DNA of 64,000 bases from contig NC_043004.1 of NCBI RefSeq assembly GCF_006345805.1, positions 58,404,001-58,468,000 of the forward strand, read 5' to 3'. The notes under the pieces were generated by a model. It worked only from the letters and a program-made list of their open reading frames with translations. It was not told where the DNA came from and searched no databases. This stretch comes from Octopus sinensis. Its lineage: Eukaryota. Positions 3,950 through 19,923 of this stretch are shown piece by piece (the stretch's first letter is position 1; the number at the start of each line of letters is the position of its first letter). The position numbers were made by a program, and so were the translations under genes.

Positions 3950-4500
<551 letters not shown>

Positions 4501-5704: not shown

Positions 5705-6713
5705 ATCCATATATATATATCTACACACATATATACATAGATATATACGCACTCATGTTCAGACTCATTACTCCTTACCATCATTCTTCTCTACTACTAA
5801 CCAACATCATCATTCATTTTTTTTTAAATGATTCATCAGACATTTACCTTTCCCACCATTGTTCATCTCTGTTGCTGTCCACCACTAATCTTATACTTGT
5901 CATGACTCATATTCATAGCTATCCCATCACACTGCTCATGCTGTTTCCTATTCAATCATATTACCAATGACTGATATATAGCTACCTATCACTGTCTCTC
6001 TTCTGTTACTCCCTCTCCTATCATCTTATCACTTTGTTGTCCCACCTGTCTTCTTTCATCTTCTTGGTAACCACTGTCATCTATTCACGTTCACAAACAC
6101 ATATATCATGAAAGACTGAAGACTACATAAAGCAGAGAAGTCTATGTGTGTATGAGAAATGTGTATGTAGACGCTTTAAATATGAAATATACAATTTTAT
6201 TTCAAATTTACATGAAAACAAGTAACTTCAAATTGTTTAGGTGTATAAATCTATTTATTACTCATAAATATAGTTTTATTGTAGAACTTGTAACAAAATT
6301 GTTAAATATAATGTTGGTTGCATAAATTAAACTAAGCTTTAGTTTGCTTGAGCACTTTTAGTCTAAAGTCAAAATAACTTTTCATTTTTACACATTAGAC
6401 ATTCACTTTTAAGCATTGATCATCAATAACCATATGATGTAATCTTATCTTTATAAAATACATGCTTTGAATTATTTCTACTTAAGATTGGAAACAACTA
6501 TAGATTTTGAAAATGATCTATGGTTAAATTTATGTTTGATTAAATTAATCTCATTGATTAAACTATGCTTTTTTTTTTCTTGCAATTTGACAGGTTTTAA
6601 AAAATAATTATGAAATTGTTAATATTAATAATGATAATGTTACTTATAATGACTATTCCAACAACAACAACAATTATAATTATGTAATAACAACAACAAC
6701 AACAATAATAATC

Positions 6714-6746
<33 letters not shown>

Positions 6747-6849
6747 GGCCTATTTAAATTTACCTAAAAAAAAAACTGAGCAATTCCAGGGAAAGTTTTT
6801 CTAAAACTTGCCTACTCATGAGTTAAATTTTATTCTTTGGGTTTAATTA

Positions 6850-6953
6850 AGGATCGTCGTCGGGTAGAAGCCATGGATGGTAGCAAAGAAATTAGCTGAA
6901 AGGTATACATATCACTTTTTGGTGCCGCTCTTATCTGTCTTGTTTCTTTTCGC
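6850..6953 (+). promoter_or_regulatory. Distal intronic editing-complementary sequence (ECS) candidate pairing with Kv2 exon 11090-11202
   Basis: 6850-6868 is the exact reverse complement of 11184-11202; 6876-6884 pairs with 11147-11155; 6934-6953 pairs with 11090-11109; all collinear and antiparallel. Confidence 0.75.
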
Positions 6954-7851
6954 TACCATACATAGGTTTTAGGATAAAATTGTTCTTATGAGTAGGAAGT
7001 TTGTCTCCATTGCCAAATAATGCATAATTTTTTTTGATATTTTCTCTTCCTCCTTTTAAAAAATTTACTATTAAACTTCACTTTAAAGGTGCCATAATTT
7101 GTAGTTATAAATAATTTGTGTTTATATGTCATTTAAACTTGCAGAAATTTAAGAGTCCATAAAATTTTACCTCATGTTCCAAATATATGTTTCATCTTCT
7201 TTTCTCTATAAATGATGATTTTCATTTTTTTTTTCTCACATTCAACTGCATTTACTTACTGAATATATTCTTTCTTCATTGTTCAATTATATTCCACTTG
7301 AATTTGTATACTTGCTACACTTAAATATACATATTTAGTTTCAAATATATATACCATTTACACATGTAAGCATAAAAAAATATGAGTGTGAGGGTGCCAG
7401 AGACAGAGAGAGTGTGTGAGAACACATACATATACTCTATGTATACACTCTCACTTCTGCAACACAAAGATACACTAGGAAACCAGCTCATAGATTGTGA
7501 AACTAGATCCACCTTAGTTGTTTCGTTGTACATTTGAAAACAAAAGTAATTCAGCATGCAACAGTTGTCCTAAGTTTCAAAAATAGGGACCAGCATTTTC
7601 TGGGAGTACCTTCACCATTGGTTGGATTTCGAGAAGGTGGTTTATTTTCATCCACGTAATGTCATAAAAATGGACCTAATCACACACTCTTATTATCCTG
7701 ACTGATGCATAAAGAAACTCTTGTAATACAATTACCTCAATTTATTCCACAATGTAAATGCATTGACATGGGGAATTATCTATACACACATTCATCACTC
7801 ATACACACGCACATACACCCCCCACACACACATATGTATATATGTATACAT

Positions 7852-9257: not shown

Positions 9258-9722
9258 AAAGATTAACATTTATACTAACTCCTCCTGTATTTTAATAGAC
9301 TTAGTTCTCATTTCCTACACTATTTTCCAGGAGGTTAAACATACTTAAAATATTTCTCTTTCAAAAATAGAAACTACATACACCCCCAACCCCCACAAAA
9401 ACAATGAAAGCAAAATCTTGAATTCAACTTTGTCAGTTGTTGATAATCAGCAAGAATAAATGTCCGTACATTAATGCATGTACACCTACACACACGCGCA
9501 CATACACACATGCACTCATATGCATACACACACTCCCCCATCATTTTTTTTTTATTCAAAATCTTTTCATATACCCTAAAATATTTTTCCTTTTTTTTTG
9601 CAGTACAGCTTGAAACCTATTTCATATAAATGTTATTTTCATTCTTGATATAGTTATTGTTTTTTTACCTATCAATGGCTTTGCTTATATTCTTATATAT
9701 TGTATATTTATTTTTGGTTTGT

Positions 9723-9754
<32 letters not shown>

Positions 9755-9759
9755 AATAT

Positions 9760-9791
9760 GTTATCCCTGCTTCTTGTTCTCTTCCAGCTTT
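9760..9791 (+). promoter_or_regulatory. ECS candidate pairing with the S1-S2 linker coding region 10679-10711
   Basis: Reverse complement aaagctggaagagaacaagaagcagggataac aligns to exon aaaggtgaaggagagcaggaaggggctgataac; several of the differences are G-U compatible. Confidence 0.5.
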
Positions 9792-9996
9792 TATTAGTGA
9801 TTACTTCCAATTTTCAGACTTCTTTATAAATATGCTTATACAGTATATGTATATATATACATTTATTACATATATATATATATAATATATATATATTATA
9901 TATATATATATAATATTTATATATATGTATAAGTATATATTTAGTATATTTATGTATGTATTTATATATTCCCATACATACTATCTGCTATTCTGT

Positions 9997-10119
9997 GGAT
10001 TGTCAGCGTAACAGCTAGCACACCTCTTCATGTACAGCATCCACTACCAATTTAGTGGCTAAAGCTGGCTGCTATAAAAATATCAAAGCCGTCTCCTACT
10101 GTCCCTATGGATGACCCAC
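9997..10119 (+). promoter_or_regulatory. Proximal intronic ECS candidate pairing with the Kv2 pore/S6 coding region 11143-11265
   Basis: Three collinear helices (10005-10024:11237-11256; 10029-10050:11214-11235; 10088-10103:11164-11179), mostly Watson-Crick and G-U pairs. Confidence 0.8.
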
Positions 10120-10126
10120 AATTATT

Positions 10127-10382
10127 TACTACTACCACCACCACTATTATTACTATTACAATCATTACTATTACTACTACTACTTTTACAACTACTACTG
10201 CTACTACTACAACTACTATTACTACCACTACTACTACTAATACTACTACCATCTCCGCGTCCTCCATTACTACTACTACCACCACCTCCACCTACTACTA
10301 CTACTACTGCTACTACTACTACTACTACTACAACTACTATTACTACTACTACTACTACCATTACTACTACTACTACTATTCA
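10127..10382. repeat. Imperfect (TAC/ACT)n trinucleotide array
   Basis: Direct inspection. Confidence 0.95.
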
Positions 10383-10589: not shown

Positions 10590-10603
10590 AAAACATTTTT
10601 CAG
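10590..10603 (+). promoter_or_regulatory. 3' splice acceptor of the Kv2 exon
   Basis: aaaacatttttcag|GTC; puts the conserved S1 start (V-L-A-I-V-S) in frame. Confidence 0.85.
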
Positions 10604-11680
10604 GTCTTGGCCATTGTGTCCATTCTCTTCATTGTCCTGTCTACCGTGGCGCTAACATTAAACACAATTCCTGGGCTCAAAGGTGAAGGAGAGCAGGAAG
10701 GGGCTGATAACCCACAGCTTGCAATTGTAGAAGCTGTTTGCATTGGATGGTTTACCTTGGAATATCTGGGACGATTCTGGGCCTCCCCGAATAAGTGGAA
10801 ATTTTTCAAAGGACCTTTGAACATTATAGACCTATTGGCAATCATGCCTTATTTCATTTCCCTAGGATTGACTGAGACCAACAAGAGTACGACGGAACAG
10901 TTCCAAAATGTCCGCAGAGTGGTGCAAATCTTTCGAATAATGAGAATTCTGCGAATTCTAAAACTTGCAAGACATTCAACTGGTCTGCAATCCTTAGGGT
11001 ACACTTTACAGAGAAGTTATAAAGAGCTAGGTCTATTAATGATGTTTTTGGCCATTGGAATACTCTTATTCTCAAGCCTTGCCTACTTTGCGGAAAAAGA
11101 CGAACCAGGAACTAAGTACGTTAGTATCCCCGAAACATTCTGGTGGGCTGCCATCACTATGACGACGGTAGGATATGGTGACATCTACCCGACGACGATC
11201 CTGGGAAAAGTTGTTGGTGGCGTATGTTGTATTTGTGGTGTGCTAGTTATTGCGCTTCCAATTCCAATCATTGTCAATAATTTCGCCGAATTTTATAAAG
11301 ATCAGATGAGAAGAGAAAAAGCATTGAAACGTAAGGAGGCTCTCGAGCGGGCGAAGAGGAATGGAAGCATAGTCTCCTTCCACTCCGTCAATCTGAGGGA
11401 TGCCTTCGCCAAAAGTGTCGACTTAATGGATGTTGCCTCCGAGGTTCCTAGAAACGACTGGGATACAAACAGTGTGGAGACGAAATCCATGAGTTCACCA
11501 CCGCCTTGTGTGATGCGGGGCTCAAACCCCAATACACCCAAGTTGAGTGGGCAAGGTGGAACAACAAACTTCAACTGCAAAGAGAATCAGGAAAATCCCA
11601 GCAACACCAACCTGTTGGATATAGATGAGGAGTCTTTGCATCGGATGACGACCCAAGCTTCAACTGATACTTCAATGCAG
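10604..11680 (+). CDS. Shab: Internal coding exon (359 codons, phase 0 at both ends) of a Shab/Kv2 (KCNB-type) voltage-gated potassium channel: S1-S6, pore and proximal C-terminus
   Basis: Translation [21 protein letters not shown] (S1)...[29 protein letters not shown] (S4)...[18 protein letters not shown] (pore)...[20 protein letters not shown] (S6 with the Kv2-type PIP)...[23 protein letters not shown] (Kv2 proximal C-terminus). Bounded by ttttcag (10601-10603 = CAG) and GTGAGT (11681). The N-terminal T1 exon(s) and distal C-terminal exon(s) were not found in the window. Confidence 0.97.
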
Positions 11681-11686
11681 GTGAGT
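11681..11686 (+). promoter_or_regulatory. 5' splice donor of the Kv2 exon
   Basis: CAG|GTGAGT, a perfect consensus; the sequence turns AT/pyrimidine-rich immediately afterwards. Confidence 0.85.
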
Positions 11687-12624: not shown

Positions 12625-12775
12625 ATATATATATATATTATATATATATAATATGTAGATATTATATATATATATAATATATATATTATATATATATATG
12701 TATAGATATTATATATATATATATATAATATGTATATATTATATATATATATAGTGTATAGGTATTCTATATATA

Positions 12776-12813
<38 letters not shown>

Positions 12814-12822
12814 TATGGATAT

Positions 12823-12853
<31 letters not shown>

Positions 12854-12963
12854 TTATATATATATATATATATAATATATATAGAGATATTATATATATA
12901 TATATATAATATATATATATAGATATTATATATATATATTATATATATAATATATATAGATAC

Positions 12964-13007
<44 letters not shown>

Positions 13008-13512
13008 TATTATATATAATATATATATATCTTTATATATAAAATTGAAGTTATGTGTGTGAGACTCTGTCTCCTCCGATTTAGATTCCTAACTATTCCC
13101 ACATTTTGCGGTGCAGTTTAACCAAAACCAGGTATCTTATAGTCGTCATTCATATCGACCCATCCTGGGTATTAGTGTACATCTACGATGAGTCTACAAT
13201 TTTAAAAAGAAAAATTTACCATCATTTTTCCGCATTTTTAATGATTTTTGCTCAGGTTATATAAGGGATGTAACTCTCTAAAAATGCTTATATAGTTATT
13301 TCCTTTACAAACCCGAGCAACGCCGGGCGATACTGCTAGTATATATATATAGATATTATATAGATATATATATATATTATAGATATATATAGATATTATA
13401 TAGAATATTATATAGTATATAGATATATATATATATATAATATATATAGATATTATATATATAATAAATATATATAGATATTATATATATATATATAGAT
13501 AATATATATATA

Positions 13513-13566
<54 letters not shown>

Positions 13567-14355
13567 ATTATATAGATATAATATATATATAATATATATA
13601 TTATATATTAAATATTTTATATATATTATATATTATTATATATTATAAATATTTTATATATATATATATATTATATATATTAAATATTTTATATATATAT
13701 ATATATTATATATATATATATAATAAATATATTTTATATAGATATTATAAAATATTATATATATATATATTATATATATATATATAATAAATATATTTTA
13801 TATATATATTATAAATATATTATATATACATATATATATAATAAATATATTATATATCCATATATATATAATAATATATTATTATATATATGTATTATAT
13901 ATACATTATATATATAATAAATATATTATATATACATATATATATAATAAATATATTATATATACATATATATAATAAATATATATTAATACATACATAT
14001 ATAAATATATTAATATATATATATTATATACGTATAAATAATAAATATATTATATATATATATATTATATACGTATATATAATAAATATTATATATATAT
14101 AAGATATACATATATATAATAAATATATTATATATATATATGTAGATATATATGTACATATATATATATGTATATATATATACATATATATATGTATGTA
14201 TATGTATGTATATATATATGTATATATATGTATATATATATGTATATATATACAACCCATGCTAGCATGGAAAATGGACGCTAAACGATGATGTATATAT
14301 ATGTATATATATATATATATGTATATATATGTATATTTAGATAAATATATATACA
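12625..14355. repeat. Very long imperfect (TA)n arrays (12625-13030 and 13340-14355) flanking the Helentron-like element
   Basis: Direct inspection. Confidence 0.95.
13028..13340 (-). mobile_element. Non-autonomous Helitron/Helentron-like element (HINE/Lep1-like ends)
   Basis: Minus strand starts actagcagtatcgcccggcgttgctcggg (hairpin) and ends ...ttttatatataaagat; second copy at 48020-48322. Confidence 0.6.
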
Positions 14356-19645: not shown

Positions 19646-19685
<40 letters not shown>

Positions 19686-19704
19686 TACTGCTCCATGATA
19701 TCTA

Positions 19705-19750
<46 letters not shown>

Positions 19751-19888
19751 TATATGTATATATATACACACACACACAATGTGTGTATATATATATATAT
19801 ATACACACCCATATGTATATATATATACACACACACATGTATATATATATATACACACACACACAATGTATATATATATATTTATATC

Positions 19889-19923
<35 letters not shown>

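What the first reader, a model, noticed from the sequence alone, without database searches (positions are those of the whole stretch)
6850..6868. Perfect 19-nt intronic antisense match to the pore-exit codons (Tyr-Pro-Thr-Thr-Ile) 4.3 kb downstream
Seen: aggatcgtcgtcgggtaga (6850-6868) is the exact reverse complement of exon 11184-11202 (tctacccgacgacgatcct), which includes A11187 of the TAC codon in GYGDIY. My arithmetic with uniform composition (64,000 x 1,077 / 4^19) gives about 2.5e-4 expected by chance, and less for a CpG-rich word in AT-rich DNA. Established (from memory): squid Kv2 transcripts are heavily A-to-I recoded in the pore/S6 region (Patton, Silva and Bezanilla 1997), including a Tyr-to-Cys site 21 residues before an S6 Ile-to-Val site; the same spacing holds here (TAC 11186, ATT 11249). 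Inference: this is the ECS that directs Y-to-C and nearby Thr-to-Ala/Ile-to-Val recoding.
Basis: partly seen in the sequence, partly recalled or inferred. Interest (0 to 1): 0.92.

Follow-up and report, generated by a model that had tools for sequence, protein, structure and literature searches.

The report
Intronic pairing partner for squid Kv2 editing
A 19-base stretch in the intron of a squid-type Kv2 potassium-channel gene is a conserved, perfect antisense partner of the pore codons, and most likely forms the double-stranded RNA that lets the editing enzyme ADAR turn a pore tyrosine into cysteine.

Summary
Window 6850-6868 is the exact reverse complement of exon 11184-11202, and nothing else in the window comes close. 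The gene is a decapodiform-cephalopod Kv2/Shab, 95% identical in protein to Doryteuthis pealeii sqKv2. The element lies in the upstream intron, which is longer than 10.6 kb.

Three results make it a real editing-site complementary sequence (ECS).
- A second squid genome, with 40-56% synonymous difference in the C-terminal tail and an otherwise almost unalignable intron, keeps the same 19-mer. There it is 20 bp perfect and 2.8 kb from the target, against 4.3 kb here.
- A spliced transcript of a relative differs from its genome at 2 of 1081 exon bases, both A-to-G: the TAC (Y-to-C) adenosine inside the duplex and the S6 ATT (I-to-V).
- The sqKv2 cDNA carries the same changes (C576, V597).

A second conserved intronic element at 9981-10112 pairs with exon 11142-11267. 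It puts a C opposite the S6 I-to-V adenosine, and its pairing lapses exactly where the distal 19-mer binds. This suggests a two-part, possibly interleaved, ECS. The mechanism is a known kind; this instance was not found described.

The parts
6850..6868 (+). Distal ECS core: a 19-nt perfect antisense match to exon 11184-11202. U6865 pairs with the edited A11187.
   Evidence: Identical in L003 at 7792-7810. All 19 pairs are invariant in both species. The duplex alone is -37.2 kcal/mol.
6849..6891 (+). Conserved distal island: the core plus a 23-nt 3' extension. The extension is predicted to pair with exon 11174-11179 and 11147-11155; these helices are tentative.
   Evidence: It is 90.7% identical to L003 7791-7833, within an intron that is otherwise almost unalignable. 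The helices were predicted. In L003, 5 of 6 and 7 of 9 pairs are kept, and all three substitutions that fall on pairs break them.
11184..11202 (+). Exonic target strand (codons ..C TAC CCG ACG ACG ATC CT.). It contains A11187, the Tyr-to-Cys adenosine, equivalent to sqKv2 Y576C.
   Evidence: A-to-G at the orthologous base in transcript L016 versus genomic L001/L002. C576 in cDNA P0121.
10604..11682 (+). Kv2/Shab exon encoding S1 through S6 and part of the C-terminal tail. It is the only Kv2 exon in the window.
   Evidence: Splice junctions confirmed by the transcript.
9981..10112 (+). Proximal ECS island: an imperfect inverted complement of exon 11142-11267. Segment P1 (about 9994-10051) pairs with 11210-11267. 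Segment P2 (10087-10120) pairs with 11142-11180. C10012 faces the S6 I-to-V adenosine A11249, and U10045 faces the S/G site 11219.
   Evidence: Conserved in L003 at 9522-9661. Duplex energies are -86.8 (whole island), -60.2 (P1) and -35.0 (P2) kcal/mol. The A.C mismatch is present in both species. Of 50 pairs, 44 are identical and 3 are kept through exon transitions.
11249..11249 (+). S6 Ile-to-Val adenosine (ATT), equivalent to sqKv2 I597V. It lies outside the distal duplex and is served by the proximal island.
11219..11219 (+). Ser/Gly site. It is a genomic G here (GGC), an A (AGC) in the loliginid genomes, and G in the sqKv2 cDNA.
   Evidence: Porath 2019, Table 2.
9759..9800 (+). Third conserved intronic island, complementary to exon 10668-10712 (S1-S2 linker). 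A candidate further ECS, but weak.

Best explanation

Proposed mechanism: in the pre-mRNA, before the upstream intron (longer than 10.6 kb) is removed, the 19-mer folds back over 4.3 kb. It forms a perfect, G+C-rich 19-bp helix (about -37 kcal/mol) with exon 11184-11202. ADAR binds this helix and deaminates A11187. That adenosine is the fourth base of the exon strand, paired with U6865, and sits in a U-A-C context. TAC is then read as TGC (Cys). The other three exon adenosines in the helix follow a G and are largely spared.

The element probably works together with a second conserved intronic element at 9981-10112. That element pairs with the exon on both sides of the 19-mer and specifies the S6 Ile-to-Val site (A.C mismatch at A11249) and the Ser/Gly position.

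Shown: the complementarity, its conservation, and A-to-G changes at the orthologous sites in relatives.

Inferred: duplex formation in vivo, ADAR action on it, dependence of editing on the element, and cooperation between the two elements.
For: 1. The match is exact and unique. It is far beyond chance (E=2e-4, next best 0.2; 0 of 100 shuffles).

2. There is independent replication. L003, an ENA squid contig, has 91.7% exon identity to the window and synonymous difference of 0.4-0.56 in the C-terminal tail. Only about 270 nt of its 10 kb upstream flank aligns. It carries the identical 19-mer, as a 20-bp perfect duplex, 2.8 kb upstream of the same exon bases.

3. In a local-alignment scan that allows G.U pairs, only two flank elements in each squid exceed the shuffled-exon maximum of about 40. 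These are the distal (49.5 and 51) and proximal (56.5 and 61.5) elements. Three non-cephalopod relatives (L017, L018, L020) are at chance, and L021 is below its shuffled maximum. L022's single hit is reported separately as a weak lead.

4. The target is edited in relatives. Spliced transcript L016 differs from same-species genomic contigs at 2 of 1081 exon bases, both A-to-G, at the TAC and S6 ATT adenosines. The D. pealeii sqKv2 cDNA has C576 and V597. Seven of its eight differences from the genomic ORF P0125 can be produced by a single A-to-G change; the eighth (P702 versus A) cannot.

5. In the proximal-only duplex, A11187 lies in a 14-nt unpaired stretch. The distal element is therefore what supplies a helix at this site.

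6. The Y-to-C site is reported as edited in cuttlefish, octopus, fly and bee (PMC6453909).

7. The region around 6850 has no hairpin of its own (z=+0.72) and is not a repeat.
Against: - There are no RNA data for the window's own species.
- There are only two genomes and the exon target is invariant, so no compensatory change can be scored.
- The three substitutions in the island's 3' extension all break predicted pairs, so only the 19-bp helix is firmly supported.
- A11187 is only 3 bp from the helix end and faces U rather than the C often seen at efficient sites.
- Squid ADAR2 can edit some mature mRNAs without intron sequence (PMC7192619), so an exon-only route is not formally excluded.
- Porath 2019 lists D. 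pealeii as genomically C at this site.
Confidence: 0.85

Rival explanations
1. The 19-mer does pair with the exon, but its selected role is something other than specifying Y-to-C. One version: it is an RNA bridge that loops out the 3' splice site and tunes or delays splicing of the upstream intron. Another version: it is a helper that stabilises the proximal duplex and recruits ADAR for the S/G and I-to-V sites, with Y-to-C as a by-product.
For: The helix encloses the acceptor at 10603 and the proximal island. The proximal island alone already forms a duplex of about -87 kcal/mol. Distant intronic duplexes that boost editing elsewhere are known for Gabra3 (PMC3479170, listed).
Against: The perfect helix sits exactly on the edited Tyr codon. 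The proximal element leaves that codon unpaired. Both squids keep all 19 pairs. An effect on splicing and an editing role are not mutually exclusive.
Confidence: 0.08
2. Y-to-C editing is driven by an exon-only structure, either a Kv1.1-type hairpin or the Rfam K_chan_RES fold. The intronic 19-mer would then be a conserved relic of an inverted duplication with no present function.
For: Rfam RF00485 matches exon 11168-11281 above its gathering score (65.6 versus 51 bits). Squid ADAR2 edits some mature mRNAs (PMC7192619). The reverse complement of the distal island reads like the exon with a 19-nt internal deletion.
Against: Only 14 of 24 consensus pairs are canonical here, and the Rfam structure evaluates to +17 kcal/mol. 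The same hit appears in non-cephalopod relatives, with higher scores, so it tracks the conserved coding sequence. A functionless relic would not stay 19 of 19 (20 of 20) identical where the surrounding intron cannot be aligned.
Confidence: 0.04
3. The element is the source or the target of a small antisense RNA (a miRNA, siRNA or piRNA-like guide) that acts on the Kv2 mRNA in trans.
For: A 19-nt perfect antisense match is of small-RNA size.
Against: There is no precursor hairpin: the fold of 6790-6930 has z=+0.72, and 150 of 200 shuffles fold at least as well. There is no Rfam hit there. The element is sense-strand intron, and the target adenosine shows the A-to-G signature of ADAR.
Confidence: 0.02
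4. The match is a coincidence.
Against: The same perfect match recurs in a second, well-diverged genome at a different distance. The chance of an independent 19-mer in 10 kb is about 1e-7.
Confidence: 0.01

Closest known systems
Classical exon-intron ECS duplexes of ADAR recoding sites (GRIA2 Q/R site; Drosophila paralytic, synaptotagmin-1)
   Same: An intronic sequence in cis pairs with the exon around the recoded adenosine. Editing must therefore precede splicing. The ECS is an island of conservation in a diverged intron. The para architecture is described in PMC4299485; the rest is from general knowledge.
   Different: The ECS lies in the upstream intron, 2.8-4.3 kb away. The core is a perfect 19-20-bp helix rather than an imperfect stem. 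It appears to share the exon with a second ECS.
Drosophila paralytic ECS / DCS / pseudoknot architecture (Rieder et al. 2013, as summarised in PMC4299485)
   Same: Several intronic elements cooperate on one exon. The predicted helices cross: distal-to-exon crosses proximal-to-exon.
   Different: Here the crossing topology is only inferred from which element covers which part of the exon. The two elements could equally be alternative structures. No mutational data exist.
Rfam RF00485 K_chan_RES (Kv1.1 I400V exonic editing hairpin; Bhalla et al. 2004, cited in PMC2606942)
   Same: It covers the homologous pore-S6 coding region and the homologous S6 Ile-to-Val adenosine. The score is above the gathering threshold.
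   Different: It concerns I-to-V, not Y-to-C. The hairpin does not form in the squid exon (14 of 24 pairs, +17 kcal/mol). In squid the I-to-V adenosine instead faces a C in an intronic complement.
Shab/Kv2 pore-S6 editing cluster of insects and coleoids (Dm Y660C, T671A, I681V; Bt Y512C, S523G, I533V; sqKv2 Y576C, I597V)
   Same: The same three codons are involved. The window carries Y, hard-wired G, and I at these positions.
   Different: The papers I could read describe the sites, not the directing RNA structure. Ingleby et al. 2009 state that the structures for sqKv1.1 and sqKv2 were unknown.
Gabra3 intronic 'editing inducer' duplex (Daniel et al. 2012, PMC3479170)
   Same: A distant intronic double-stranded element influences a short exon-containing helix.
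   Different: In that case the inducer does not pair with the edited exon. Here both elements do.

Membership tests
Intronic ECS of an ADAR recoding site | Cis complementarity between the intron and the exon, with the edited adenosine inside the helix | tested here: met
   A 19-bp perfect helix, 6850-6868 with 11184-11202. A11187 pairs with U6865.
Intronic ECS of an ADAR recoding site | The target adenosine reads as G in RNA but A in genomic DNA | tested here: met
   Met in relatives only. Transcript L016 versus genomic L001/L002 shows A-to-G at the TAC adenosine. cDNA P0121 has C576. Not tested for the window's own species.
Intronic ECS of an ADAR recoding site | The ECS is conserved while the surrounding intron diverges | tested here: met
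   The 19-mer is identical, within a 43-nt island at 90.7% identity. Only about 2.7% of the 10-kb upstream flank aligns. Only two species were available.
Intronic ECS of an ADAR recoding site | Compensatory (covarying) changes keep the helix intact | tested here: inconclusive
   No variation occurs in the 19 pairs, and there are no two-sided changes anywhere. In the proximal helix, three exon transitions keep pairing with U.
Intronic ECS of an ADAR recoding site | Editing is lost when the ECS is mutated and restored by compensatory mutation; editing depends on ADAR | not testable with these tools
   This needs a minigene, genome editing, or an in vitro ADAR assay.
Rfam RF00485 K_chan_RES | Covariance-model score at or above the gathering threshold | tested here: met
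   65.6 bits against a threshold of 51, at 11168-11281. This is the exon, not the finding's element.
Rfam RF00485 K_chan_RES | The consensus hairpin is formed by the sequence | tested here: not met
   14 of 24 pairs are canonical, and the structure evaluates to +17.2 kcal/mol. The same sequence-driven hit appears in the outgroups.
miRNA / mirtron precursor | A stable local hairpin that contains the 19-mer | tested here: not met
   Fold of 6790-6930: -25.5 kcal/mol, z=+0.72.
Dispersed repeat or transposon fragment | Further copies elsewhere in the window | tested here: not met
   Within 6600-7100, only the exon match and a 64-nt AT-rich match were found.

The most novel reading that the evidence does not exclude
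The pore/S6 editing cluster of squid Kv2 may be specified by a split, interleaved intronic ECS. A proximal imperfect inverted copy of the exon pairs on both sides of the Tyr codon but has a gap exactly there. A distal 19-mer, kilobases upstream, plugs that gap. Together they would build a quasi-continuous, pseudoknot-type duplex of about 120 bp that coordinates the Y-to-C, S-to-G and I-to-V sites. A similar upstream-intron complement with an A.C mismatch at the I-to-V adenosine, found in an arthropod-like Shab locus (L022), would hint that this arrangement is ancient rather than specific to cephalopods.
Probability: 0.3. Interest if true: 0.75.

Novelty: new member of a known kind. Interest (0 to 1): 0.6.

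Why it matters
Squid Kv2 was the first heavily edited cephalopod message (Patton et al. 1997). The Y-to-C, S-to-G and I-to-V cluster is among the few recoding sites shared by insects and coleoids. In 2009 the RNA structures that direct this editing were described as unknown (PMC2606942), and I found no later description.

Cephalopod recoding is often discussed in terms of exonic structures and cytoplasmic editing. A conserved, kilobase-range intronic partner shows that at least this classic site most likely uses the conventional nuclear, pre-splicing route.

It also gives exact coordinates for mutagenesis, antisense blocking and cross-species tests. If the two-element architecture holds, it would be a natural example of how separate intronic elements divide an exon between them to set the editing of neighbouring sites.

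Tried and rejected
- Metagenome scan for the 19-mer. It gave 12 hits, all G+C-rich (52-74%) bacterial contigs matching only 19-22 nt, so they are chance matches.
- Finding more cephalopods. The first protein search returned only one cephalopod cluster, with one long contig (L003). The other members are contigs of 1.9 kb or less, or cDNA.
- Exact look-up of the window's own ORF: not on record. P0052 (an ant): not on record.
- Identifying the species. I could only establish that it lies outside the loliginid cluster.
- Sliding duplex-energy scan of the flanks. It was too noisy to discriminate, because long loopy duplexes dominate. I replaced it with a local-alignment scan that allows G.U pairs.
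- Synonymous-site constraint specific to the paired segment: not significant (p=0.55). The whole S1-S6 core is constrained relative to the tail.
- An early reading that a T-to-C change in L003 converted a G.U pair to G-C in helix 2 was wrong. T6878 pairs with A11153, and the change creates an A.C mismatch.
- Rfam K_chan_RES as the explanation: rejected.
- miRNA precursor and repeat origin: rejected.
- Ryan et al. 2008 and Liscovitch-Brauer et al. 2017 could not be read.

Full report
**1. The observation.**
The 19-mer AGGATCGTCGTCGGGTAGA is at 6850-6868 on the + strand. Its exact reverse complement is at 11184-11202. No other copy exists in the window, even with two mismatches, and none of 100 dinucleotide-preserving shuffles gave a match.

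When the whole exon is compared with the antisense strand of the whole window, this match has E=2.2e-4 and the next best has E=0.21. The ungapped match ends sharply at 19 nt.

**2. The gene.**
The reading frame across 10604-11682 encodes S1 to S6 and part of the C-terminal tail of a Kv2/Shab channel. The only close relatives in the 5.8-billion-protein collection form one cluster. That cluster contains Doryteuthis pealeii sqKv2 (O18476 / CAA74748, here P0121), which is 95% identical to the window.

The window differs from all loliginid members at several residues, so it comes from another decapodiform-like cephalopod that I could not name. No other Kv2 exon is in the window. The preceding intron is therefore longer than 10.6 kb, and 6850-6868 lies inside it on the sense strand.

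A spliced transcript of a relative confirms the acceptor (cag|GTCTTGG) and the donor (CAG|gtgagt).

**3. Is the target edited?**
Logan contig L016 (SRR9970006) is a spliced mRNA. Over the 1081 nt of this exon it differs from two genomic contigs of the same species (L001, L002) at exactly two bases, both A-to-G:
- the middle A of TAC (Tyr to Cys), which is the orthologue of A11187;
- the first A of the S6 ATT (Ile to Val), which is the orthologue of A11249.

The D. pealeii cDNA has Cys576 and Val597. Seven of the eight cDNA differences from the genomic ORF P0125 can be produced by a single A-to-G change: I391V, Q489R, I490V, I496V, Y576C, S587G, I597V and K675R are listed, with P702 versus A the one that cannot.

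Porath et al. 2019 list the same Y-to-C, S-to-G and I-to-V sites as edited in bumblebee, Drosophila (Y660C, T671A, I681V), cuttlefish and octopus. The other three adenosines of the 19-mer (11192, 11195, 11198) are unchanged in both transcripts. Each follows a G, the 5' neighbour that ADARs disfavour (established knowledge). A11187 sits in U-A-C.

**4. Conservation.**
L003 is a 44-kb ENA contig that carries the orthologous exon at 91.7% nucleotide identity. Where amino acids are identical, synonymous codons differ at 40-56% of positions in the C-terminal tail. The two species are therefore well separated.

Of the 10 kb upstream, only three short islands align: window 6849-6891, 9759-9857 and 9981-10112. 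The first island contains the identical 19-mer. In L003 the perfect duplex is 20 bp, because the exon has T where the window has G11203. It lies 2.8 kb from its target instead of 4.3 kb. An independent 19-mer match within 10 kb has a probability of about 1e-7. This is therefore inherited and maintained complementarity.

In a local-alignment scan that credits G.U pairs, only two flank elements in each squid beat the best of 15 shuffled exons (about 40). These are the distal element (49.5 and 51) and the proximal one (56.5 and 61.5). Three non-cephalopod relatives (L017, L018, L020) and L021 are at chance level within 10 kb on either side.

**5. Structure of the distal element.**
The 19-bp helix alone is worth -37.2 kcal/mol. 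Cofolding extends it through a small internal loop to two further helices: 6870-6875 with 11174-11179, and 6876-6884 with 11147-11155. The total is -57 kcal/mol here and -51 in L003.

A pair count on the two species gives the following:

| Helix | Pairs kept in L003 |
|---|---|
| Helix 1 (19-bp core) | 19 of 19, invariant |
| First extension | 5 of 6 |
| Second extension | 7 of 9 |

The three substitutions that fall on pairs all break them, and one creates an A.C mismatch at A11153. Only the 19-bp core is therefore firmly supported. With an invariant exon and only two genomes, covariation cannot be tested.

The region has no hairpin of its own (z=+0.72), has no Rfam match, and is not repeated in the window.

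**6.
The island at 9981-10112 lies 0.5-0.6 kb upstream of the acceptor. It is an imperfect inverted complement of exon 11142-11267, with a duplex energy of -86.8 kcal/mol. Its 54-nt core is identical at 53 of 54 positions in L003.

In both species the S6 Ile-to-Val adenosine (A11249) faces a cytosine (C10012) in the middle of a helix of about 50 bp. This is the classic A.C configuration of efficient ADAR sites. The Ser/Gly position (11219) pairs with a U. Of the 50 pairs, 44 are identical. Three exon transitions (at 11219, 11224 and 11260) keep pairing with U, and three pairs at the helix ends are lost.

The complementarity of this element lapses over 11180-11204. In the proximal-only duplex, A11187 sits in a 14-nt unpaired stretch. 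This is exactly the segment that the distal 19-mer covers. Conversely, the reverse complement of the distal island reads like the exon with 11156-11174 deleted, and that segment is covered by the proximal element.

The helices cross: distal-to-exon encloses the proximal island, while proximal-to-exon reaches beyond it. A nested folding program therefore picks one or the other. It chose the distal helix in the window and the proximal one in L003. The two may form together as a pseudoknot-like composite, with summed helix energies near -130 kcal/mol. Alternatively, they may be alternative conformers. This cannot be decided here.

**7. Mechanism proposed.**
Pairing occurs in the nascent pre-mRNA once the exon has been transcribed. 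The edited bases lie only about 0.6 kb past the acceptor, so the intron is still present at that point. ADAR binds the helix and deaminates A11187, and splicing follows. The near-complete A-to-G change in the assembled transcript and in the cDNA fits a very stable helix.

The complementarity, its conservation and editing in relatives are shown. Everything else is inference.

**8. Comparison with what is known.**
This is the canonical exon-intron ECS mechanism. The unusual features are:
- an upstream intron and a kilobase range;
- a perfect core helix;
- an apparent division of one exon between two intronic elements, reminiscent of the multi-element para structure summarised in PMC4299485.

Rfam RF00485 (the Kv1.1 editing hairpin) matches exon 11168-11281 above its threshold. 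However, only 14 of 24 consensus pairs can form, the structure evaluates to +17 kcal/mol, and the same hit appears with higher scores in the outgroups. It is a match to conserved coding sequence, not to a structure.

Ingleby et al. 2009 state that the RNA structures directing sqKv1.1 and sqKv2 editing were unknown. My searches found no later description. Squid ADAR2 can edit some mature mRNAs, which is why an exon-only route is kept as a minor rival.

**9. Verdict.**
This is a new, well-supported instance of a known mechanism at a historically important editing site, with a possibly new composite architecture.

Noticed in passing
window 9981-10112 (L003 9522-9661): A second conserved intronic element that is an imperfect inverted copy of exon 11142-11267. 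It puts a C opposite the S6 Ile-to-Val adenosine A11249 and a U opposite the Ser/Gly site. Its pairing lapses exactly over the 19-mer target.
   Followed up: yes
window 9759-9800 with exon 10668-10712 (L003 9406-9450 with 10124-10163): A third conserved intronic island, pyrimidine-rich. In both species it is complementary to the purine-rich S1-S2 linker codons (-36.5 and -33.9 kcal/mol). Each score alone is at chance level. No edited site in that segment appears in the two transcripts available.
   Followed up: partly
window 11168-11281: An Rfam RF00485 K_chan_RES hit (65.6 bits). It is driven by the conserved pore-S6 coding sequence. The consensus hairpin does not form here, and the same hit occurs in all outgroup loci.
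   Followed up: yes
window 11219: The Ser/Gly editing site is a genomic G (GGC) in this species, an A (AGC) in the loliginid genomes, and G in the sqKv2 cDNA. The edited state is hard-wired here, as Porath 2019 report for octopus.
   Followed up: partly
window 10604-11263 versus 11264-11650: Synonymous differences from L003 are 0-26% across the whole S1-S6 core but 38-56% in the C-terminal tail, apart from one 20-codon block (11324-11383) at 15%. This suggests RNA-level constraint on the entire heavily edited core. The step up falls close to the end of the proximal duplex (11267).
   Followed up: partly
L022 4024-4066 with exon 10635-10675 (JGI 3300059792, arthropod-like Shab): An upstream-flank complement to the S6 region, 6.6 kb away. 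It has an A.C mismatch at the Ile-to-Val adenosine. The score is 49 against a shuffled maximum of 44.5. This may be an analogous ECS outside the molluscs.
   Followed up: partly
P0014, P0024 (protein hits, taxon unnamed): Genomic ORFs of some non-cephalopod relatives encode GYGDICPTT, that is, Cys hard-wired at the Tyr-to-Cys position.
   Followed up: no
L003 column equivalent to window 6878 / exon A11153: In L003 a T-to-C change in the distal island places a C opposite the first A of the ATC (Ile) codon in 'AAITMTT'. This could mark a lineage-specific editing site. Neither transcript shows a change there.
   Followed up: no
PMC6453909 Table 2 versus L001/L002/L003: Porath 2019 list D. pealeii as genomically Cys at the Tyr-to-Cys site, but three loliginid-like genomic contigs read TAC. 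Near-complete editing in a transcriptome-derived reference might explain the discrepancy.
   Followed up: no
window 4009-4479, 12625-14252, 19649-19904, 10127-10378, 9825-9969: Long (AT)n arrays, with G+C as low as 17% around 12-14 kb. There is also a (TAC)n array between the proximal island and the acceptor, and an AT-rich dispersed repeat with many copies across the window.
   Followed up: no
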